From Ramazzottius varieornatus (taxonomy: Eukaryota; Animalia; Tardigrada): a DNA stretch of 38,828 bases. Below the pieces are notes generated by a model. That model was not told where the DNA came from and ran no database searches. It worked only from the letters and a program-made list of their open reading frames with translations. Each line of letters begins with the position of its first letter. Position 1 is the first letter of the stretch. The stretch lies in contig BDGG01000025.1 in assembly GCA_001949185.1 (NCBI GenBank), positions 67,522 through 106,349 of the forward strand, given 5' to 3'. The position numbers and the translations under genes are program-made. This document shows, in pieces, positions 11,001 through 38,485 of the stretch.

Positions 11001-11953
11001 CCCGGAAGCACCTCACGAACAGGTAAAGCTCCTGCCTTCTGCACGGCGGAAAATCGGGGCGAAATTCCTCGGAAATATGCATTCCAAAAATAGAGTACGG
11101 GAGCTCGGCAAACGAGCTCGACCAGATGGCTTTTAGCCATATTACTGAGAAAGTGCGCCACTTGGGAAAATGATCTGCTCGACTATCCCTGTCGAGCTCC
11201 CAAACGGCTTTCGGTAGTGTTCGTCGAATCACTCATGATTTAAAATTTCATCTAGATGAAATTGTACCGATGGAGGATGAGGAAATGCCCATCGATGTCA
11301 CCTACACATCTCCCGCCCAACTGGCCGACCACCTGTTGACGCTTTCCCTTCTCCCGGACTACCGATGGAAGAACCTGGCTCAACAAGACCTCATCCGCGA
11401 GCGGAACAAGCCTCGAGAAGCCCTGAAGCTCCCCGAAAAAGCCCCGTTCTTCCTACCGACCATTCCTGGTCTTGACGGACTCAAGTTCGACCTAAGCCAG
11501 AAAGAGAACACAGCCGAATCCACTACCAAGAAGAACACCAAGAACGTTTCTAGTTTATTCGGTAACAACTCTCCTTTTTACGAAGCTCTGTTGAGAGCTG
11601 AAAGTAGTCTAAAGCCTTTTGAGATACTAGTCGAATTATCGCCGTCGAGTGTGGAGACGGAAATGAGGAGGTTGTCACCGGAGAGTGGCGGTTCAGTGAA
11701 AGCCCTGGAAGGCTTCCTGAGGTGCGCGAGTGCGGCTGTCCAGGATGGACGGAATGGAGAGCTGGTTCAAAGTTACATTGACTTGTTCTTCAAGCTTCAT
11801 GGAACGTGTCTAGCGGACGAAGCGGTTAGCGAAAGGGTGGTGGACCTGGTGAAAGACCTGAGAAGTAAAGTGAGCGAGAGCGCGACGAATTTGGAGAATT
11901 TGTTAGATCAATCGTTGAACGTTGTGCTTTTTCTCAAACATGTGGCTTCGTAG
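8017..11953 (+). CDS. WDR36: WD repeat-containing protein 36 / UTP21 (SSU processome), about 11 exons
   Basis: N-terminus SRIFCGQRSLGYVCNNIP; HPVTYLNKILVGSQQGSLQLWN; GHKASITDMAFSPDGRWLVSASKDCSIRVWD; Utp21 C-terminal LLTLSLLP..RWKNL...IRERNKP...PEKAPFFLPT. Canonical GT-AG introns. Confidence 0.96.
10089..10213. mobile_element. Palindromic MITE in a WDR36 intron
   Basis: Ends TGGGAGCT / AGCTCCCA, with internal inverted TTCCCAAGTGACGCAC / GTGCGCCGCTTGGGAA. Confidence 0.65.
11099..11202. mobile_element. Second copy of the same MITE family, in the last WDR36 intron
   Basis: GGGAGCTCGGC ... GTGCGCCACTTGGGAAAA ... GTCGAGCTCCC. Confidence 0.6.
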
Positions 11954-25517: not shown

Positions 25518-26692
25518 ATGCCGCCGTCACCTGTGATTGTCGTATGCGCAGTCACACTGATTTCCGTTTTAGTGAAAGTGCTTTTGATATACAAGGTAAG
25601 CACTGTCTGTTATGTGTCCCCTTTTGAAAAAGGACAAGTCAAAGCAGCTTCTCGGCCCTAGAGGGAGAACGTCCTGGACAATGTACTTTCTTTGCCCGAC
25701 TGCGCTCAACTCGTGACTTCCGGTCGATTGAAGATACCCTCATCTTTGTCCAGTAAGGGGTGTCTGTCTTCTCAGTGCTTAGTCCAGCATGCTCAAGCTC
25801 TGCTCTGGAACTTTCAGATTGGTGGAGTAAGGTAGATCTTTTCCCGTCACACGCAGGAAAGGAAATCGTCCGACCAGTCCTGTTCGATAACATCCCAGCA
25901 GTTCTCAAGCTAAAACGCCTACCTGAAAAGTGTCTTTCTATCGCCGAAACCATTCGAGGCACCCAAACTACACCTCTCGAACATGTCAGACGGTCCGTCC
26001 AAGCAAATTATCATGAAGGGGTAACGGAGCCTTTACTGAACAGGATTGAGTCAGAAGATTTGGAATCGATATTCTGTCGACTACAGCAACCCGAATACTT
26101 CTTCCTCTTATGGGCATCCCTACTGAAACGCTCCTCACCGCACTTTCCTCGACTGCTCGGAACATGTGGAGAAGTTTATATTGTTGAAAACGTGGAGGAA
26201 GTCCTGAATGAGGAGTTCATCCGGTCTAAAAGCTGGAACGAAATGCAACCTGTGATAAACAGTTTCATTTCCCTGACTGAGCATTTGAATCATGTTTCGA
26301 TTCAACTATGTGATGTGAAGTTGGACAACTTCGGCTGGGATCCTTCCACACAAGAAGTGAAGATGGTCGACTTGGACACGGCGTTCTTCACGGGCTCCTT
26401 ACAGGAGCAGTTTCGCGAAAGACAGTGCGTGTCCGATGAAGATTGTCATCTGTTCTCCTGTCGTGGTTGCTGCGACGTGCCCAACCGGAAGTGCCTCGTA
26501 AAAATAGCGGACAATAATTTGGTGAGGATCTGCCGAGAAATTTTCGCGCCGAGATTTATGGAGATGGGCTTGTTTTCTGGTGCGCCGTTAGCGAAGAAAG
26601 AGAGGTTGTTTAAGTTGGCGAAGAACTGTGGGCGATTCCAGATGGACTGGTCGGACTTCCGGTCGGCATATCAGCCGGAAATAGCACAATAG
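25518..26692 (+). CDS. Divergent protein kinase domain protein (FAM69/DIPK1-like, PIP49_C), N-terminal signal anchor
   Basis: HFPRLLGTCGEVYIVE, LCDVKLDNFG, VKMVDLD and Cys-rich CVSDEDCHLFSCRGCCD...C...NNLVRICREIF. Hydrophobic first exon 25518-25595. The join between exon 1 and the main ORF (25760-26692) could not be resolved. Confidence 0.8.
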
Positions 26693-32770: not shown

Positions 32771-33781
32771 TAGACCTGGCAATGGTGTGGTTTTACCACA
32801 CCACACCGAAAAAACCACACTTTTTGGTTTCGGTGTGCGCAGAACACCAAGTCGAAAAAAGTGGTGTCCGTTCCACACCGAGTTTTCGGTTTCGGTGTCC
32901 GAGAACACCACATTACACCAAACCGAAAAACTTCTGGTGCACCATTTTATAGGAAGGCATGCCTTGATCGTGAGCTAAAGCGGAGCATGACATGCTTTGA
33001 GTGGCCAAACATTCAGGGAAAACCGACAGGACCAGTAGAATTAAGCATACTGACGTCAGGTTTAGCTTCGGTGTATGCATTGTTGTCATTCGGTGTCTGT
33101 TCGTACATCTGTGTCATTCGGTTTCTGTTTGTACACCAAGGTTTGCTGCCTAGCGGTTATCAAGTAAAAAGTTTTGCTTTTTGGTTTGGTGTGGTGTGGT
33201 GCACCAAAATAGTGGTGTTCGATTCACACCACACGGAAAAAAGTGGTGTGACTTTCGCACCCAGTGGTTTCGGTGTGGAAGAACACCAAGCCAAAAAACA
33301 CGACACCACACTTAATCACACTTAATCACACTTTTGTATGGTGAGCCGGGCGATTCAAAAGTCCACAGTACTTTCACCGCGGGTGCAAGCGCCGAGAAAC
33401 TCCATGCGCGAAGAAATACTTTTTCTGCGCATCCACCAGCGGACTATGACGACTATGACGTTTTTCCACGCATCCATGCGCGGTTTAACTGTTTCTCCGC
33501 GCATGGATGCGCGGAAAAACTCGACTTTATCCGCGGGTGTATACGCGGATAAAGTATTTCTCCGCGCATGGAGTTTCTCTGCGCATCCGCGCGCGGACAA
33601 CGTCGAGTTTTTCCGCGCGTACACCCGCGAACAAAGGCATTTCACCGCGTGTGCATGCGCAGATAAAGTCAGTTCATCCGCGCATCCGTGCGCGGAGAAA
33701 CAGTTGAACCGCGCATGCACCCGCGGTGAAAGTACTGTGGAGTTTTGAATCGCGCGGCTCACCATACTTTTGCCAGGTCTA
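32771..33781. mobile_element. Non-autonomous hAT element carrying a nested element
   Basis: TIR TAGACCTGGCAA / TTGCCAGGTCTA. Perfect 8-bp TSD GTCGGAGT at 32763-32770 and 33782-33789. Subterminal CACACC/GGTGTG repeats. Confidence 0.93.
33337..33766. mobile_element. Nested palindromic MITE, IS3EU-like termini (430 bp)
   Basis: TIRs of more than 50 bp starting TATGGTGAGCCG and ending CGGCTCACCATA. 6-bp duplication CTTTTG at 33331-33336 and 33767-33772. Internal CCGCGCA repeats. Confidence 0.8.
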
Positions 33782-34010
33782 GTCGGAGTCTCTGCTTCAG
33801 TGCTTCGTAAACCAGCCTAGCCTTCCGTTTCGCCATACCTTTACGGCCCTGTATGAACACTGACGCCGCCTCGCCTACTGACATGAATTCATTCTGTCTT
33901 CCAGTGTTTTGGTTTGGTCAGAGTGATATCATTTCGGTTTGGTTAATTTGTATCTTTAATCCTTCCCCGCTCTCAAGACTTGTAGATTTTGAATTATCTC
34001 TCTCTCAACC

Positions 34011-35420
34011 ATGGCTGACACTCAGAACCCGATGGGACAGATTCCCGAGAAGCAGCAGAACATCATCAACGATACCTGGTCACAGCTGCTTGGCGCTGAA
34101 GGAGGCGTCCAAAATCTGGCCATGAGTTTAGTCAAGAGGTTGGTTGCTTGATTAGTTGATTTATTGCTTAGTTTCCGTGCCGTTTGTTATCCTGATAATC
34201 GTCGTGTTTCAGCTTTGCTGCGTCTCAGCTGGGAGGTCAAGGTGGTGCGGGAGGTGGAGGTGACTCGATGAGCCAACTTGGAGGCATGTTTGGCGGTGGC
34301 GCTGGTGGACAAGATAGTGCAGCAGCAGGACAAGCTCCGGCTGAAAGCGATACTTCCACGACCAACACTGCTTCCGCTCCGGCTGACACTGAACAAGGCA
34401 GCGGGGATCAGCCGAACGATCAGTGGTACGAGTATGGAAAGATGGCTGGAGAGTGGGTGAGAAATGCCATGGGAGGAGGCGCAGGTGGTGCAGCTGGAGC
34501 AGCGGGAGAAGTTCCGGCCGGAGCGGCTACCGCGTCTCCGCAGACGAGTCAAACAGGTGGTCAGGCTCCTGGAGGTAGTGGACTCTTGGATCAGCTTGGC
34601 GGACTAGGGGGTCTAGGGAACATTGCTGGACAGTTCCTGGGTGGTGGTGGAGGTCAGGCAGCCAGTGGTAGCGGCGGAGGCGGACTGGGAAACATTCTGA
34701 CGTGAGTATCAGATGTTCACCTGAGACTATTGTTTTGACGTCATCTTCTTGAAATTTCGATAGTAAACAACCTACTTTAGATGTTCGCGTACAGTGTGAC
34801 GTCATACGCAAGTGGAACAGGGAAACGGTTGAATGTTGTTTTACCGTGTGCTCTTGCAGGGCGGTTGGTGGGCTCGGTGGATTAGCTGCACTAGCTGGAA
34901 ATCTGAAAGATCCAAGTAGGTTTTGTGCTAAAAGGAAGAATGCATTGTTAGAGAGTCATGCACAGATCGATTTCTTTCTTTGTGTGGTAGACTCCTTGTT
35001 GAATTTCTTCATGAAGACTCCCGTGGCAAATGCCGCTTCCAACCCGGATAATTCCTCACGCGATATTTATAAGGTATGCGTGCACATTATCTCGGTATAG
35101 TGTTGAAAGGGTTGTTTAACGATCAAAGAGCAAGGCTGAACCGAACAGGCAGTGACAAGAGGAATTTTTATGATCGATAAATAGTGACACTGAAATATGG
35201 AGCAGAATTCTACGTGGAAAATTCCACTTAGTACGTCTTCCTGACGATGAATAAATTTATCAGCATTTTCCTTTCGCTGTAGATCATCAAGGGCACAATT
35301 TTTAACTTGCTGGGTTCCAAGCTGCCAGCTGAGAACTTCCAGCAGAATCCGGAAGCCCAGTCGGCTTGGAAGGGGTACTTGGGCGTCATTGCCAATGCCC
35401 TTCACAAAATGTCTACGTAG
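34011..35420 (+). CDS. Divergent globin-like protein lacking heme His residues, with a large Gly-rich insert; 297 aa, 5 exons
   Basis: Exons 34011-34138, 34213-34701, 34860-34915, 34991-35073 and 35283-35420 join without stops (894 nt). A/B-helix-like PEKQQNIINDTWSQL..VQNLAMSLVKSF; EF-like GNLKDPNSL; G/H-like DIYK|IIKGTIFNLL...PEAQSAWKGYLGVIANAL. Confidence 0.72.
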
Positions 35421-35899
35421 CACTCGTCAAGTCCAGCGCTTTGCGAACGCCGGCCGTTTCTATTTCCCTCTGTAAACACTAACCATCACCGAAATCCATT
35501 CCCTAAATTTTCCTGAAGAATGTAGCATGGTTGCAGTGTTGTAGCGTGTTTTACCCTGTCTCCTTTTGCACGTATGATCTGGCATTGGTTTTTAGTCTCA
35601 GGCATTTTTCTTTTGGTTTCTACTGGTTACTTTTTACTCTCGGCGTGTATTATGGAAAGCTAGAATCGGGTCACAGCATATTCAACATGAGCCAACAAAA
35701 ACTTGGCAAAGTTCGGAATAAAGTTTCGCTTGACTGTTTAAGATTTGAGGCGACATACGGGATAGTTATTTTTCTCCCGGTGAAATAGTTTCGTCTGCGG
35801 TGATTATGTTGAAAGACCAAGGGGGATTTTGAATCATCCGTAACCAAAAACCGGTCAACAAAATGCATTTTGCGGTAATGCGAGTATGCGGCATCCGTT

Positions 35900-38485
35900 T
35901 CAGGCGGCTGCGGCAGTTTCGGGTTCTTCACTCTGGGCTTCATCCAGAGAACGTCCGCTCTTCGGTAGGCGGACTTTCCACCTCCTATAATTCGTCGAGG
36001 GGATATCCTTGCATGGTATTACCGGGTTGGTCCTACAGGAAGAAGTTCAGGCTTTCTTTGCCGTTGAGGCTGTTTTGTTCTGGGCTTACTTGGCATCCGG
36101 AAGTAGGAAAGCGTGTGGCTGGACTGCTTCCATCACTGGGGTGTTATCGCAAAGTATTCTAGACATTGTGGTACTTCTTATGGCTTCGACTTGCTCTGAA
36201 AAGTGAGGTGAGTTAGGAGCAGTTGTTTGATCACTAGGACCCAGGACATAAAACCTTGAGCCGAGGGGGGCGGGTTGATGCTTACTGTCGGACATAGACG
36301 AGGATAGAGGGAGGTCGTTCTCGTACCAAAACCTGTCTCCGAATCTTAGCCTTCTGAATTGGTCAGCAATGATACAGGCAAAGGTGGGACCGACCTGCCC
36401 ACCCGTAACGTGGTTCTCGGCCGTACCGGCGATGTATAAGTCCACGTCCTCGATATCACTGCAACGTGAATCTGATACTACACTAGTATGTTGCAAAGAT
36501 AATTCAATCATAATTCAAACTGTAGCTGTTCAAGAAATTTATTTGAAAACAGTTTCTTGAAGGATCTTTTTCTATCGTCGTCTGGCTTGTCTTATCAGAA
36601 GGGTCGCAGCGGTGTACACAGATATTTCCTACAGTATTCTGCGGGCATGGTCAACCAGCTTGTGCTTTGGAAATCAAGACCTACGAAATTTACTTGTATT
36701 GGTCCTCCATTTTGTCGGCGATATCAGTGGGTATGATATTCATAGCCCTTAATTCGTCAAAGTTCGATGCAGTTGGCAGCCCGCACAACTGTCGCCATTT
36801 CATCCAGCCAGGAATACCATGGTCGCGTCCCCGCTGAATATTCAGTGCAGTCAGGTCCAGACCAAAGGCGTCGCCAGGTATCTCAAAGAGATGATTTGTC
36901 AGCTCGTCGACGAAGTTATTATCGATCTCTTGTGTGGGTGAGGACACCATGCCGAGGATGACTTCATCGAAAGCGTTCTTGTCGTACAAGGCAAAGGGAT
37001 GAAAGAAGGTGGTCTTGAGGTTCTCGCTTCCACGGAACTTGTAGTCTTTGTCGGACCGTCGGAAAGCGTTCTGTACCATGGTGTGACCAACACGGTAGGC
37101 GGCAGTGGCAAACTCGTTCAGGATGCCGGGGTGCATGGATATGTTGTACTCGCGGAAGCGACCGGTGTTGAGCAACCGAAGGTTCCATTTGTCCAACATT
37201 TGGTCGCCCAGCAAAACTGGCAAAAACTCCTAACAGTCATATCAAATTACGTTCTAGCAGAGTAGCTCGATCAGTTTTGGTGCCATAACATGTCCATATG
37301 ACGCTGGGTTCTTCTAATTGGCACTTCCGAGGTATGTTCCGAATTGTTGAGGAAACGAGTTTTTGCTGGAGGGGTGTCAGTCGAACTCTCCAGACCGCTA
37401 ATGCAGTTATCTGGAGCATGCCCTAAACCATCGAATGCTGGAGATATGCGAGAAACGAATGGATGGGGAAATTTTGGCGGAAATGTCCATGTAGGGAAGA
37501 CAGCTGAAAGAGAGTTTTCTGCACCAATTTTCTATGCATGGTTTGCAGTACGGGCCGAATCAGCTGTTTCCGGGACGCAGTTTTATTTCCTTTATGACTC
37601 ACCGAAAACCTTGCTGACATACTATTCTACGCGAAGGTGCGCGCCAAGCCAGTTTTTCTTCCATACATGGAACGGTGATGAGCTACTTTTCGGACAATGG
37701 TCAAAGGCTCATTACCGTGTCATCTGGTGTCTCACTTCGAATTTGGATGTGTCTTCATGAGCTTTGAATGCCCATGTTCTTAGAGGGGTGAAAACTCGCC
37801 CTGTCGGGGAAGTGCCAAATAGCAAAAACCAGCACCATATGCATACTACAGAAAGTATCGTTCGAAGATCGCTTGAGATATTTTTTCTACAATCTCTCTG
37901 TGGTTCTGTATGTTGGTGTGGTTCTTACACTGTAAGTGATGTGTTGAAGTTGAGCGACGGTGATATGGCGAGCTTCGTGGAAGAGTTTCTGGTCTCTCCA
38001 GTGTGGGTTGAATTCGTGAAGAATACTTGCGATACGGTTGTGATGACGCAGCCAAAGAGTTTGAAATTCGGCAATACCCAGCTGTAACAAAACTTAATGT
38101 AGCGAAAACAACATCGTCCGAACGAAATGACGTGGGAATAAGAACACAATCTGAAAGCGAACAGGGAACTTTCGCTTTTCTGTTGACAGACTTACGTGAA
38201 CGTTGGCCCGACTGTCACCTGTCAACCAAAATGAGGAAATAATATCAATATTCTGATATTCTGAAGAAATGTCTTGATGTCAAATGTGTCAAACGTAGTC
38301 TGGCTCTGAGGAAAAGCTTAAGACTGTGAAGACTAACTTAGTACAGCAATGAAAGTGTACAAGAGGTTTACCGGCCTTGAAGCACATTTTGTTCTCGTTG
38401 GCGTCGATGCATTCGGCGTTTTTGGGATTCTGAGGCAGTAGCATGTAGTGCGGATCGTCTTTCGGTGAAAAGAACTTCAGCTGAC
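35900..38485 (-). CDS. Animal heme peroxidase (peroxidase-cyclooxygenase family, chorion peroxidase/peroxinectin-like); 5' exons not found in the window
   Basis: Exons 38372-38485, 38196-38218, 37929-38081, 36694-37229, 36286-36458, 36090-36195, 35900-36032. Motifs CFKAGDSRAN, HHNRIA, NEFATAAYRVGH (proximal His), LNIQRGRDHG and GPTFACIIADQF..LRFGDRFWYE. Confidence 0.93.

What the first reader, a model, noticed from the sequence alone, without database searches (positions are those of the whole stretch)
34011..35420. Hidden His-less globin-like gene with a ~150-aa Gly-rich disordered insert
Seen: five GT-AG exons splice into an intact 297-aa ORF. Its N-terminal ~45 aa (QQNIINDTW...LAMSLVKSF) and C-terminal ~95 aa (NILTAV..GNLKDPNSLLNFF..DIYKIIKGTIFNLL..PEAQSAWKGYLGVIANAL) resemble globin helices A-B and E-H. 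Known: animal globins keep ancient introns at B12.2 and G7.0. Here intron 1 is phase 2 at the inferred B12 codon and the last intron is phase 0 directly after YK (inferred G5-G6), which independently supports homology. The C/CD/D region, including the usual Pro C2 and Phe CD1, is replaced by Gly/Ala/Ser/Gln-rich sequence. The only His lies 5 residues from the C-terminus, so there is no F8 or E7 His. Inference: a repurposed non-heme globin scaffold displaying an intrinsically disordered loop, possibly for stress protection, condensate formation or lipid binding. The ORF track does not reveal it.
Basis: partly seen in the sequence, partly recalled or inferred. Interest (0 to 1): 0.88.

Follow-up and report, generated by a model that had tools for sequence, protein, structure and literature searches.

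The report
Heme-less globin relic with glycine-rich loop

Summary
Window 34011-35420 (+) carries five GT-AG exons. The product is the 297-aa GenBank entry GAV09702.1, "hypothetical protein RvY_19195" of Ramazzottius varieornatus, so the gene is annotated, not hidden.

The globin reading is supported by three kinds of evidence:
- AlphaFold models of this protein and its 182-aa paralogue hit only globin-fold chains at ranks 1-39 and 1-35 of 48,161 PDB chains (Z 9.0-6.2).
- A seven-sequence family profile finds cytoglobin in the PDB (E 0.007).
- All four introns, in phases 2, 2, 1 and 0, coincide with four of the five introns (B12.2, E13.2, an EF-corner intron, G7.0) of genuine heme globin genes in the same genome.

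Exon 2 normally encodes helix C to E12. Here it is 54-163 codons of Gly-rich, predicted-disordered sequence with no detectable similarity to globin exon 2. No His is conserved, and the F8 position holds Ser, Gly, Asn or Ala.

Two paralogues are each conserved in three eutardigrade genera. Function is unknown; binding or self-association without heme is an inference. Other unchecked notes in this scan report His-less globin-fold genes elsewhere in this genome.

The parts
33883..34010 (+). 5' untranslated region (minimum extent)
   Evidence: Transcript contigs begin at 33883 (X3) to 33947 (X6).
34011..34138 (+). Exon 1: start codon, globin helices A and B up to B12. It ends with 2 bases of a codon (phase 2).
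   Evidence: Translation and joint. Similar to exon 1 of real tardigrade globins, with the exon ends coinciding (HMMER 12.9 bits, P 4e-6; hhalign P 7.6e-5).
34139..34212 (+). Intron 1, 74 nt, GT..AG, phase 2; equivalent to globin intron B12.2
   Evidence: Spliced out in 4 of 4 runs. Real globin genes L007, L008 and L011 have a phase-2 intron at the aligned codon.
34213..34701 (+). Exon 2: 163 codons of Gly/Ala/Ser/Gln-rich sequence, predicted disordered, with hydrophobic LGG(L/M)..F-type motifs. It sits where globin exon 2 (helix C to E12) would be.
   Evidence: Translation. pLDDT is below 50 over residues 52-199. No similarity to real globin exon 2 (hhalign P 0.9). Composition and motifs.
34702..34859 (+). 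Intron 2, 158 nt, GT..AG, phase 2; equivalent to the E13.2 intron of tardigrade globin genes
   Evidence: Joint. The codon aligns to cytoglobin G87 = E13. L007, L008 and L011 have a phase-2 donor in codon E13.
34860..34915 (+). Exon 3: remnant of the C-terminal half of helix E and the EF corner (ends ..NLKDP)
   Evidence: Translation. Model helices 201-207 and 210-218.
34916..34990 (+). Intron 3, 75 nt, GT..AG, phase 1; equivalent to the EF-corner intron of globin genes L007 and L008. It is in frame and stop-free but is spliced out.
   Evidence: Joint in 4 of 4 runs and no contig covers it. L007 and L008 have a phase-1 donor after NLDDV / SLDDT. Column equivalence comes from cytoglobin and L011.
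34991..35073 (+). Exon 4: helix F and the FG region to G6. The F8 position holds Asn/Ala, not His.
   Evidence: Translation, alignment to cytoglobin, spacing argument.
35074..35282 (+). Intron 4, 209 nt, GT..AG, phase 0; the ancestral globin intron G7.0
   Evidence: Joint in 3 of 4 runs, with low-depth contigs inside the intron. HMMER aligns IYK|II with cytoglobin YFK|IL. Real globins L007, L008 and L011 have a phase-0 intron there, and the exon starts coincide.
35283..35420 (+). Exon 5: helices G (from G7) and H, and the stop codon TAG at 35418-35420
   Evidence: Translation. pLDDT 87-95. A paralogous exon lies at G000:C9, 50% identical, E 2.7e-8.
35421..35652 (+). 3' untranslated region (minimum extent; two contigs run past 35900)
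   Evidence: Contig ends.

Best explanation
RvY_19195 is an expressed member of a small tardigrade gene family that descends from a heme globin gene. The family has two paralogues in this genome, each with orthologues in Hypsibius and Paramacrobiotus. Helices A, B, the end of E, F, G and H are kept and are predicted to pack as a globin sandwich. Exon 2, which in the parent type encodes helix C, the CD corner with Phe CD1, helix D and E1-E12 with the distal His, has been turned into Gly-rich disordered sequence: 54 codons in the short paralogue and 163 here. The proximal His F8 is replaced by a small residue, and no His, Cys, Met or Tyr is invariant. The protein therefore almost certainly does not hold heme in the classical way.

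Shown here: the splicing, the conservation pattern, the predicted fold, the intron correspondence and the loss of the heme residues.

Inferred, at about 35-40% for this mechanism: the six-helix remnant works as a stable scaffold. A long flexible loop leaves it at the end of helix B and re-enters at about E9. The loop's repeated hydrophobic LGG(L/M)AGQFLGG-like motifs mediate weak multivalent binding, either self-association or binding to a partner or a hydrophobic surface, rather than gas chemistry.
For: - Splicing: four GT..AG joints in contigs of 3 runs and three joints in a fourth, from four studies.
- Identity: the product equals GAV09702.1.
- Family: orthologues are P0004 and P0005. The paralogue is P0006, with orthologues P0011 and P0013/P0012. 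The paralogue gene has the same five exons and the same phases.
- Conservation: the N- and C-terminal parts are conserved while the middle varies in length and sequence.
- Fold: the AF2 model of P0006 has pLDDT 81 and pTM 0.75. The P0001 model has its core at pLDDT about 84-96 and its loop below 50.
- Fold search: VIA-align against 48,161 chains puts only globin-fold chains at ranks 1-35 (Z 9.0-6.2) and ranks 1-39 (Z 8.9-6.2). These cover chain residues about 1-146 and include tardigrade Kumaglobin 5ziq at Z 7.7 and 8.3. The listed Foldseek rows are globins except one.
- Sequence: the family profile against the PDB gives 9 globins among 14 hits. Cytoglobin scores E 0.007 over E12 to helix H, and Lucina HbII/III match helices A-B.
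- Exon 1: against real tardigrade globin exon 1 it scores 12.9 bits, P 4e-6, and hhalign P 7.6e-5.
- Introns: all four coincide in codon and phase with B12.2, E13.2, the EF phase-1 intron and G7.0 of genes L007 and L008.
- Exon 2: no similarity to real exon 2.
Against: - No Pfam globin hit at E<=10, either for the whole protein or exon by exon.
- phmmer of the single protein against the PDB finds no globin.
- Profiles of either sub-family alone find no globin, so the sequence signal depends on the joint profile.
- Foldseek E-values are weak (0.2-1.3). Z of about 9 is in the range that helical models can reach by chance, according to the tool's own note.
- The C-terminal exons are not significantly similar to the tardigrade globins tested (P 0.008-0.3).
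- The structures are predictions from seven sequences.
- Nothing here bears on function. Absence of heme binding is inferred from residues, not measured.
Confidence: 0.8

Rival explanations
1. It is still a heme or tetrapyrrole protein that uses unconventional ligands (Lys, Met, or a residue in the loop), with the Gly-rich loop acting as a flexible distal lid.
For: The globin sandwich is predicted with high confidence. K43 and K140 (P0006 numbering) are invariant. The short paralogues are Met-rich (15 Met in P0006).
Against: No His, Cys, Met or Tyr is invariant across the family. The F8 column holds Ser, Gly, Asn or Ala. Phe CD1, E7 and E11 belong to the exon that was replaced. The only His of the window protein is not conserved.
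Confidence: 0.06
2. It is not a globin relative at all. It is an unrelated lineage-specific helical protein that AlphaFold happens to pack like a globin, and the intron matches are coincidence.
For: There is no Pfam hit. Sub-family profiles find no globin. The Z-scores are middling for an all-helical model. The protein atlas gives nothing.
Against: Four of four introns coincide in codon and phase with introns of real globin genes of the same genome. By my rough estimate that has a chance of about 1e-6 even allowing one codon of slack. Exon 1 is significantly similar to real globin exon 1. Cytoglobin is the best PDB sequence hit. The top of the fold-search list is uniform.
Confidence: 0.06
3. 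It is a decaying globin duplicate, a transcribed relic with no function of its own.
For: The catalytic and ligand residues are lost and one exon has degenerated to low complexity. No function is known.
Against: The ORF is intact and correctly spliced. The two paralogues are each kept in three genera. The folded parts are 73-75% identical across genera over the C-terminal 98 residues while the loop drifts. That is the pattern of purifying selection on the scaffold.
Confidence: 0.05
4. It is a DUF937 (YidB-like) protein, as UniRef's name for the paralogue suggests.
For: UniRef labels P0006 'DUF937 domain-containing protein'. The atlas structure list contains a DUF937 cluster at TM 0.23-0.28.
Against: PF06078 does not match P0001, P0004, P0005 or P0006 at E<=10. 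A six-frame scan of the genome with PF06078 does not touch either locus. The label probably reflects the Gly-rich stretch.
Confidence: 0.02

Closest known systems
Heme globin genes of Ramazzottius varieornatus of the L007/L008 type (G000:C13 about 938 kb and C17 about 95 kb)
   Same: Exon 1 is similar in sequence. Introns lie at B12.2, E13.2, the EF corner (phase 1) and G7.0 in the same codons and phases. The spacing from E13.2 to the EF intron is identical at 12 codons.
   Different: The real genes keep Phe CD1, His E7 and His F8, have a 37-codon exon 2, and have one more phase-1 intron (after ALDSIV / AMDVII). The family has a Gly-rich exon 2 of 54-163 codons and no heme residues.
Cytoglobin and other animal 3-on-3 globins, including tardigrade Kumaglobin (PDB 5ziq)
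   Same: Best sequence hit in the PDB (E 0.007). Predicted fold matches at Z 6.8-9.0 over the whole chain.
   Different: There is no heme-ligating His, no C-D region and no first half of helix E. Pfam PF00042 does not match.
Degenerate arthropod globins: hexapod androglobin domains lacking E7 and F8, Puriana HbL2 (Met CD1, Val E7, Val F8), and Daphnia HbLs with Tyr or Val at F8 (PMC7457136)
   Same: Animal globin derivatives that have lost the residues needed for classical heme and O2 binding, with an alternative function suspected.
   Different: Those keep a full-length, recognisable globin sequence. Here a whole exon's worth of the fold is replaced by a disordered loop, and the family is duplicated and conserved across tardigrade genera. 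That survey listed only three tardigrade globins.
Bacterial non-heme globin domains (RsbR N-domain 2bnl, PA3967 1tu9, Bacillus anthracis pXO1-118-type sensors; PMC8717448, PMC7457136)
   Same: A globin fold used without heme. These are the functional precedent for a binding or sensing role, including fatty-acid binding.
   Different: Independent origin. The RsbR domain matches only at Z 4.7-5.2, against 8-9 for animal globins. Those domains have no Gly-rich insert and no introns.

Membership tests
Globin (heme-binding globins, Pfam PF00042) | 3-on-3 alpha-helical sandwich fold | tested here: met
   Tested on AF2 models only. Ranks 1-35 and 1-39 of 48,161 chains are globin-fold proteins, Z 9.0-6.2, with 108-134 residues aligned over the whole chain. 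Helices C, D and E1-E8 are missing.
Globin (heme-binding globins, Pfam PF00042) | Sequence match to the family model above its curated threshold | tested here: not met
   No PF00042 hit at E<=10 for the exons, P0001, its orthologues or its paralogue. The locus is not among the genome's PF00042 matches. There is only a marginal profile hit to cytoglobin, E 0.007.
Globin (heme-binding globins, Pfam PF00042) | Proximal histidine F8 | tested here: not met
   The F8 column holds Ser124/Gly125 in P0006 and Asn238-Ala240 in P0001. No His is invariant in the family.
Globin (heme-binding globins, Pfam PF00042) | Distal pocket: Phe CD1 and His/Gln E7 | tested here: not met
   The exon that encodes them is replaced by Gly-rich sequence with no similarity to globin exon 2.
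Globin (heme-binding globins, Pfam PF00042) | Ancestral intron positions B12.2 and G7.0 | tested here: met
   G7.0 is supported by the HMMER alignment to cytoglobin and by coinciding exon starts with real globins. B12.2 is supported by HMMER and hhalign alignment to real tardigrade globin exon 1. An ungapped alignment to vertebrate globins would put intron 1 three to four codons later, so the assignment needs a 3-residue AB-loop insertion. Both aligners introduce that insertion.
Globin (heme-binding globins, Pfam PF00042) | Binds heme | not testable with these tools
   Needs recombinant protein and spectroscopy. The residues predict that it does not bind heme.
Descent from the L007/L008-type tardigrade globin lineage | Shared lineage-specific introns (E13.2 and the EF-corner phase-1 intron) | tested here: met
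   Same phases. The spacing is 12 codons in both P0006 and L007. Column equivalence is supported through cytoglobin and L011 (hhalign P 0.017).
DUF937 (PF06078) | Match to the family model | tested here: not met
   No hit at E<=10 in four family members. The genome scan with PF06078 does not touch either locus.
Bacterial non-heme sensor globins (RsbR-type) | Closer in structure to RsbR-type domains than to heme globins | tested here: not met
   2bnl scores Z 4.7 and 5.2, against 8-9 for animal globins.

The most novel reading that the evidence does not exclude
The family is a previously unrecognised class of tardigrade protein: a heme-free globin remnant whose exon-sized Gly-rich loop, with repeated LGG(L/M)AGQFLGG-like stickers, drives reversible self-assembly or hydrophobic-surface binding. 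Such a role could matter during desiccation. It would be an instance of a folded enzyme-like domain converted exon-wise into a scaffold plus disordered region.
Probability: 0.15. Interest if true: 0.85.

Novelty: new variant of a known kind. Interest (0 to 1): 0.64.

Why it matters
Globins are one of the best-studied protein families, and animal members that have given up heme are rare and poorly understood. Here the loss is unusually clean. One exon, the one that builds the distal heme pocket, has been swapped for a disordered loop, while the rest of the fold and all the ancestral splice sites are kept. The result has been duplicated and conserved across tardigrade genera. That gives a directly testable case of how a folded domain is repurposed. 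It also adds a candidate to the small set of tardigrade-specific proteins with long disordered regions. Finally, it shows that intron positions can establish homology where sequence models such as Pfam fail.

Tried and rejected
**Searches that found nothing**
- Pfam exon by exon and on the whole protein found nothing. NCBIfam found nothing meaningful.
- phmmer of P0001 against the PDB gave only CbbX at E 0.4.
- The protein atlas for P0001 and P0006 gave scores below 0.8 and TM below 0.3, which is uninformative.
- Sub-family-only profiles against the PDB found no globins.
- hhalign of the family against the single-exon globin at L004 was not significant.
- The family's exons 3-4 and exon 5 against the matching exons of L007, L008 and L011 were not significant by HMMER.
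- Family exon 2 against real exon 2 was not significant.
- The DUF937 lead from UniRef's name was not reproduced.
- The metagenome scan for relatives found none.
- Searches for the locus tags in papers and in supplements of two tardigrade transcriptome papers found none.
- A DNA-level search for tandem duplication in exon 2 found only short degenerate GGN-type repeats.

**Steps that could not be run**
No orthologue DNA was available, so there is no dN/dS and no cross-species intron check.
- The joined (spliced) model was never typed or submitted. I searched with exon 2 by reference, which returned the database's own identical record, and I used that id.
- Exons of the real globin genes were handled one by one and never joined.

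Full report
**1. The observation**

The sequence at 34011-35420 (+) contains five exons: 34011-34138, 34213-34701, 34860-34915, 34991-35073 and 35283-35420. They are bounded by GT..AG introns of 74, 158, 75 and 209 nt, in phases 2, 2, 1 and 0. Together they give an open 297-codon frame.

I laid the assembled contigs of four public runs from four studies on 33700-35900. X1, X2 and X3 show all four joints exactly as predicted, and X6 shows three. There are no mismatches. The runs' type is only a guess, but contigs that lack all four introns are spliced transcripts. They start at 33883-33947 and run to at least 35652.

No contig covers intron 3. Low-depth contigs lie inside intron 4 and look like unspliced precursor.

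**2. Identity**

I did not type or submit the joined model. A search of 1.84 billion cluster representatives with exon 2, given by reference, returned a 297-aa protein that is 100% identical over residues 44-205. It is GAV09702.1, "hypothetical protein RvY_19195" of the tardigrade Ramazzottius varieornatus. The genome is 55.8 Mb in 200 contigs. The gene is therefore publicly annotated but uncharacterised. I found no paper that mentions it.

**3. The family**

- Orthologues exist in Hypsibius exemplaris (BV898_10927, 255 aa) and Paramacrobiotus metropolitanus (280 aa, misnamed "calpain clp-1-like").
- The genome has one paralogue, on contig 9. It has the same five exons and the same intron phases.
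- Its product is RvY_13526-2 (182 aa), with orthologues in the same two genera.
- Across the seven sequences, the first ~45 and last ~90 residues align well. The middle varies from about 40 to about 150 residues and is Gly-rich.
- H293, the only His of the window protein, is Arg in both orthologues. No His, Cys, Met or Tyr is invariant in the family.

**4. Is it a globin? Negative results**

- Pfam, NCBIfam and a single-sequence search of the PDB give nothing.
- The protein atlas gives nothing.
- Profiles of either sub-family alone find no globin in the PDB.

**5. Is it a globin? Positive results**

- *Sequence.* The joint seven-sequence profile finds 14 PDB sequences at E<=10, and nine of them are globins. 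Cytoglobin is best, at E 0.007, aligned from E12 to helix H. Lucina hemoglobins II and III match helices A-B.
- *Models.* AlphaFold2 on the family alignment gives a confident model of the short paralogue, with pLDDT 81 and pTM 0.75. Its helices are 13-29, 34-52, 93-104, 110-121, 126-129, 132-150 and 160-181, and residues 54-87 are disordered. The model of the window protein has the same core and a loop (52-199) below pLDDT 50.
- *Fold search.* Against 48,161 representative PDB chains, aligned without Foldseek, ranks 1-35 for the paralogue and 1-39 for the window protein are all globin-fold proteins from animals, plants, fungi and bacteria. Z is 9.0-6.2, 108-134 residues are aligned, and the alignments span essentially the whole globin chain. 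The hits include tardigrade Kumaglobin.
- *Foldseek.* All listed rows but one are globins, but with weak E-values of 0.2-1.3.
- *Caveat.* The tool itself warns that Z of about 9 can occur by chance for helical models. What counts here is the uniformity of the list, not the score.

**6. Introns, the strongest evidence**

I read the genuine globin genes of the same genome that a six-frame PF00042 scan had located. Three of them (loci L007, L008, L011) keep Phe CD1, His E7 and His F8.

The junction DNA of L007 and L008 shows five introns:

| Intron | Phase | Position |
|---|---|---|
| B12.2 | 2 | Before (Y/F)F..P |
| E13.2 | 2 | In the codon after KAHGTTVL, six codons after the distal His |
| Extra intron | 1 | After ALDSIV (L007) / AMDVII (L008) |
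| EF-corner intron | 1 | After NLDDV / SLDDT |
| G7.0 | 0 | After ..AFE / ..AFA |

L011 has three of them: B12.2, E13.2 and G7.0.

The family's four introns have phases 2, 2, 1 and 0. They match as follows:

- **Intron 1.** HMMER aligns the family's exon 1 to L008 exon 1 at 12.9 bits (P 4e-6 for one comparison, four comparisons made). hhalign aligns it to the three-gene exon-1 profile at P 7.6e-5. In both alignments a 3-residue gap falls in the AB loop and the exon ends coincide exactly. This resolves an ambiguity, because an ungapped alignment to vertebrate globins would place intron 1 three to four codons after B12.
- **Intron 2.** Its split codon aligns with cytoglobin Gly87 = E13.
- **Intron 3.** Its split codon follows (N/G)L(K/D)(D/N)P. 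This aligns with the codon after NLHDP in cytoglobin and after NLEDG in L011 (hhalign P 0.017). That is the split codon of L007 and L008.
- **Spacing.** The distance between introns 2 and 3 is 12 codons in both the short paralogue and L007.
- **Intron 4.** It follows IYK / IFS, aligned with cytoglobin YFK|IL, which is G7.0. The last exons start in the same column as those of the real globins.

Four of four introns shared in codon and phase with one lineage of real globin genes is very hard to explain without common descent. My rough estimate of the chance probability is about 1e-6, allowing one codon of slack. This is an inference, not a tool result.

B12.2 and G7.0 are the recognised ancestral globin introns, and central E-helix introns vary between lineages (PMC7457136).

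**7. What changed**

In the real genes, exon 2 has 37 whole codons. It encodes B13 to E12: helix C, Phe CD1, helix D, the distal His E7 and E11. In the family, the exon between the same two introns has 54 codons (short paralogue) or 163 codons (window gene). It is 31% Gly and 17% Ala in the window protein, is predicted disordered, and shows no similarity to real exon 2 (hhalign P 0.9).

The loop carries copies of a hydrophobic motif resembling (L/F)xxQLGG(L/M)AGQFLGG. There is one copy in the short paralogues and about two to four in the long ones. In the long proteins, the retained end of helix E itself resembles the motif. There is no recent DNA tandem duplication.

Counting from the shared introns, the proximal His F8 falls on Ser124/Gly125 in the paralogue and on Asn238-Ala240 in the window protein. 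Classical heme binding is therefore very unlikely, though this is inferred and not measured.

**8. Mechanism**

The following points are shown:
- The gene is expressed and correctly spliced.
- Its scaffold is under conservation while its loop drifts.
- The predicted fold is a globin sandwich lacking the distal half of the pocket.

The following is inferred. The remnant is a stable six-helix scaffold presenting a tethered flexible loop, and the loop's hydrophobic motifs mediate weak multivalent contacts. These could be self-association, a partner protein, or a hydrophobic ligand or surface in or near the vacated pocket. I put about 35-40% on this mechanism. Bacterial non-heme globin domains that bind fatty acids or act in stress sensing are the functional precedent (PMC7457136, PMC8717448), but they are not relatives: RsbR scores only Z 4.7-5.2. 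I could obtain no data on regulation under desiccation.

**9. Rivals**

- *Unconventional heme binding.* No conserved ligand exists.
- *No homology, model artefact.* The introns and exon-1 similarity contradict this.
- *Decaying relic.* Two paralogues conserved in three genera, plus expression, contradict this.
- *DUF937.* This comes from UniRef's label for the paralogue and is not reproduced by PF06078.

**10. Novelty**

Degenerate animal globins are known. Examples are hexapod androglobin domains, Puriana HbL2, and Daphnia HbLs with Tyr or Val at F8 (PMC7457136). That survey listed only three tardigrade globins.

In the literature I could search, I found no description of a globin derivative in which a whole exon's worth of the fold is replaced by a disordered Gly-rich loop and which is duplicated and conserved in a phylum. 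I class it as a new variant of a known kind.

Other first-stage notes in this scan report further His-less globin-fold genes elsewhere in this genome. I did not test them.

**11. Limits**

- The structures are predictions from seven sequences.

Noticed in passing
window 36089-37223 (- strand): Two ORFs match the animal haem peroxidase family (PF03098, E 2e-27 and 3e-48). The gene is convergent with the globin-relic gene, and transcript contigs of X1 and X3 run past 35900 towards it. A heme enzyme next to a heme-less globin is probably coincidence in a compact genome.
   Followed up: partly
window 11270-11950 (+) and 25760-26689 (+): ORFs with a Utp21 domain (E 2e-46) and a FAM69/PIP49 protein-kinase domain (E 3e-34). 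These are ordinary neighbouring genes.
   Followed up: no
window 34916-34990: Intron 3 is 75 nt, in frame and without a stop. It would add 25 residues, including one His and two Cys, if retained. A genomic ORF from a close relative (P0009) is also open through it. No transcript contig retains it. By my estimate, about 30% of 25-codon stretches are open by chance.
   Followed up: partly
window 35074-35282: Low-depth contigs (X1, X2) lie inside intron 4, and the X6 contig runs from exon 4 into it. This is probably unspliced precursor. Retention would stop the frame after 8 codons and remove helices G-H.
   Followed up: no
L007 (G000:C13 about 938 kb, -) and L008 (G000:C17 about 95 kb, -): Genuine globin genes with two micro-exons of about 20 and 18 nt that encode E14-E19 and the EF corner. 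That gives five introns in a ~150-codon gene. Exon-level scans miss such micro-exons easily.
   Followed up: partly
P0006 / P0005 (database names): UniRef calls the paralogue 'DUF937 domain-containing protein', and RefSeq calls the Paramacrobiotus orthologue 'calpain clp-1-like isoform X3'. The DUF937 name was not reproduced by model searches here. The calpain name was not tested and found no Pfam support. Both probably reflect the Gly-rich stretch.
   Followed up: yes
window 34349-34396 region of exon 2 (protein residues 113-128): A Trp/Tyr-rich segment inside the loop (DQWYEYGKMAGEWVRNAM) is identical in a 66%-identical relative's exon (P0002). AlphaFold draws it as a helix at low confidence. 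In the other genera the same columns hold the QLGGLAGQFL-type motif.
   Followed up: partly
fold-search lists: Spider-silk spidroin domains (2lyi, 9lif, 6tv5, 7a0i) appear just below the globins at Z 4.5-6.1. This is a shared helical arrangement in another Gly/Ala-rich protein class, with no evidence of kinship.
   Followed up: no
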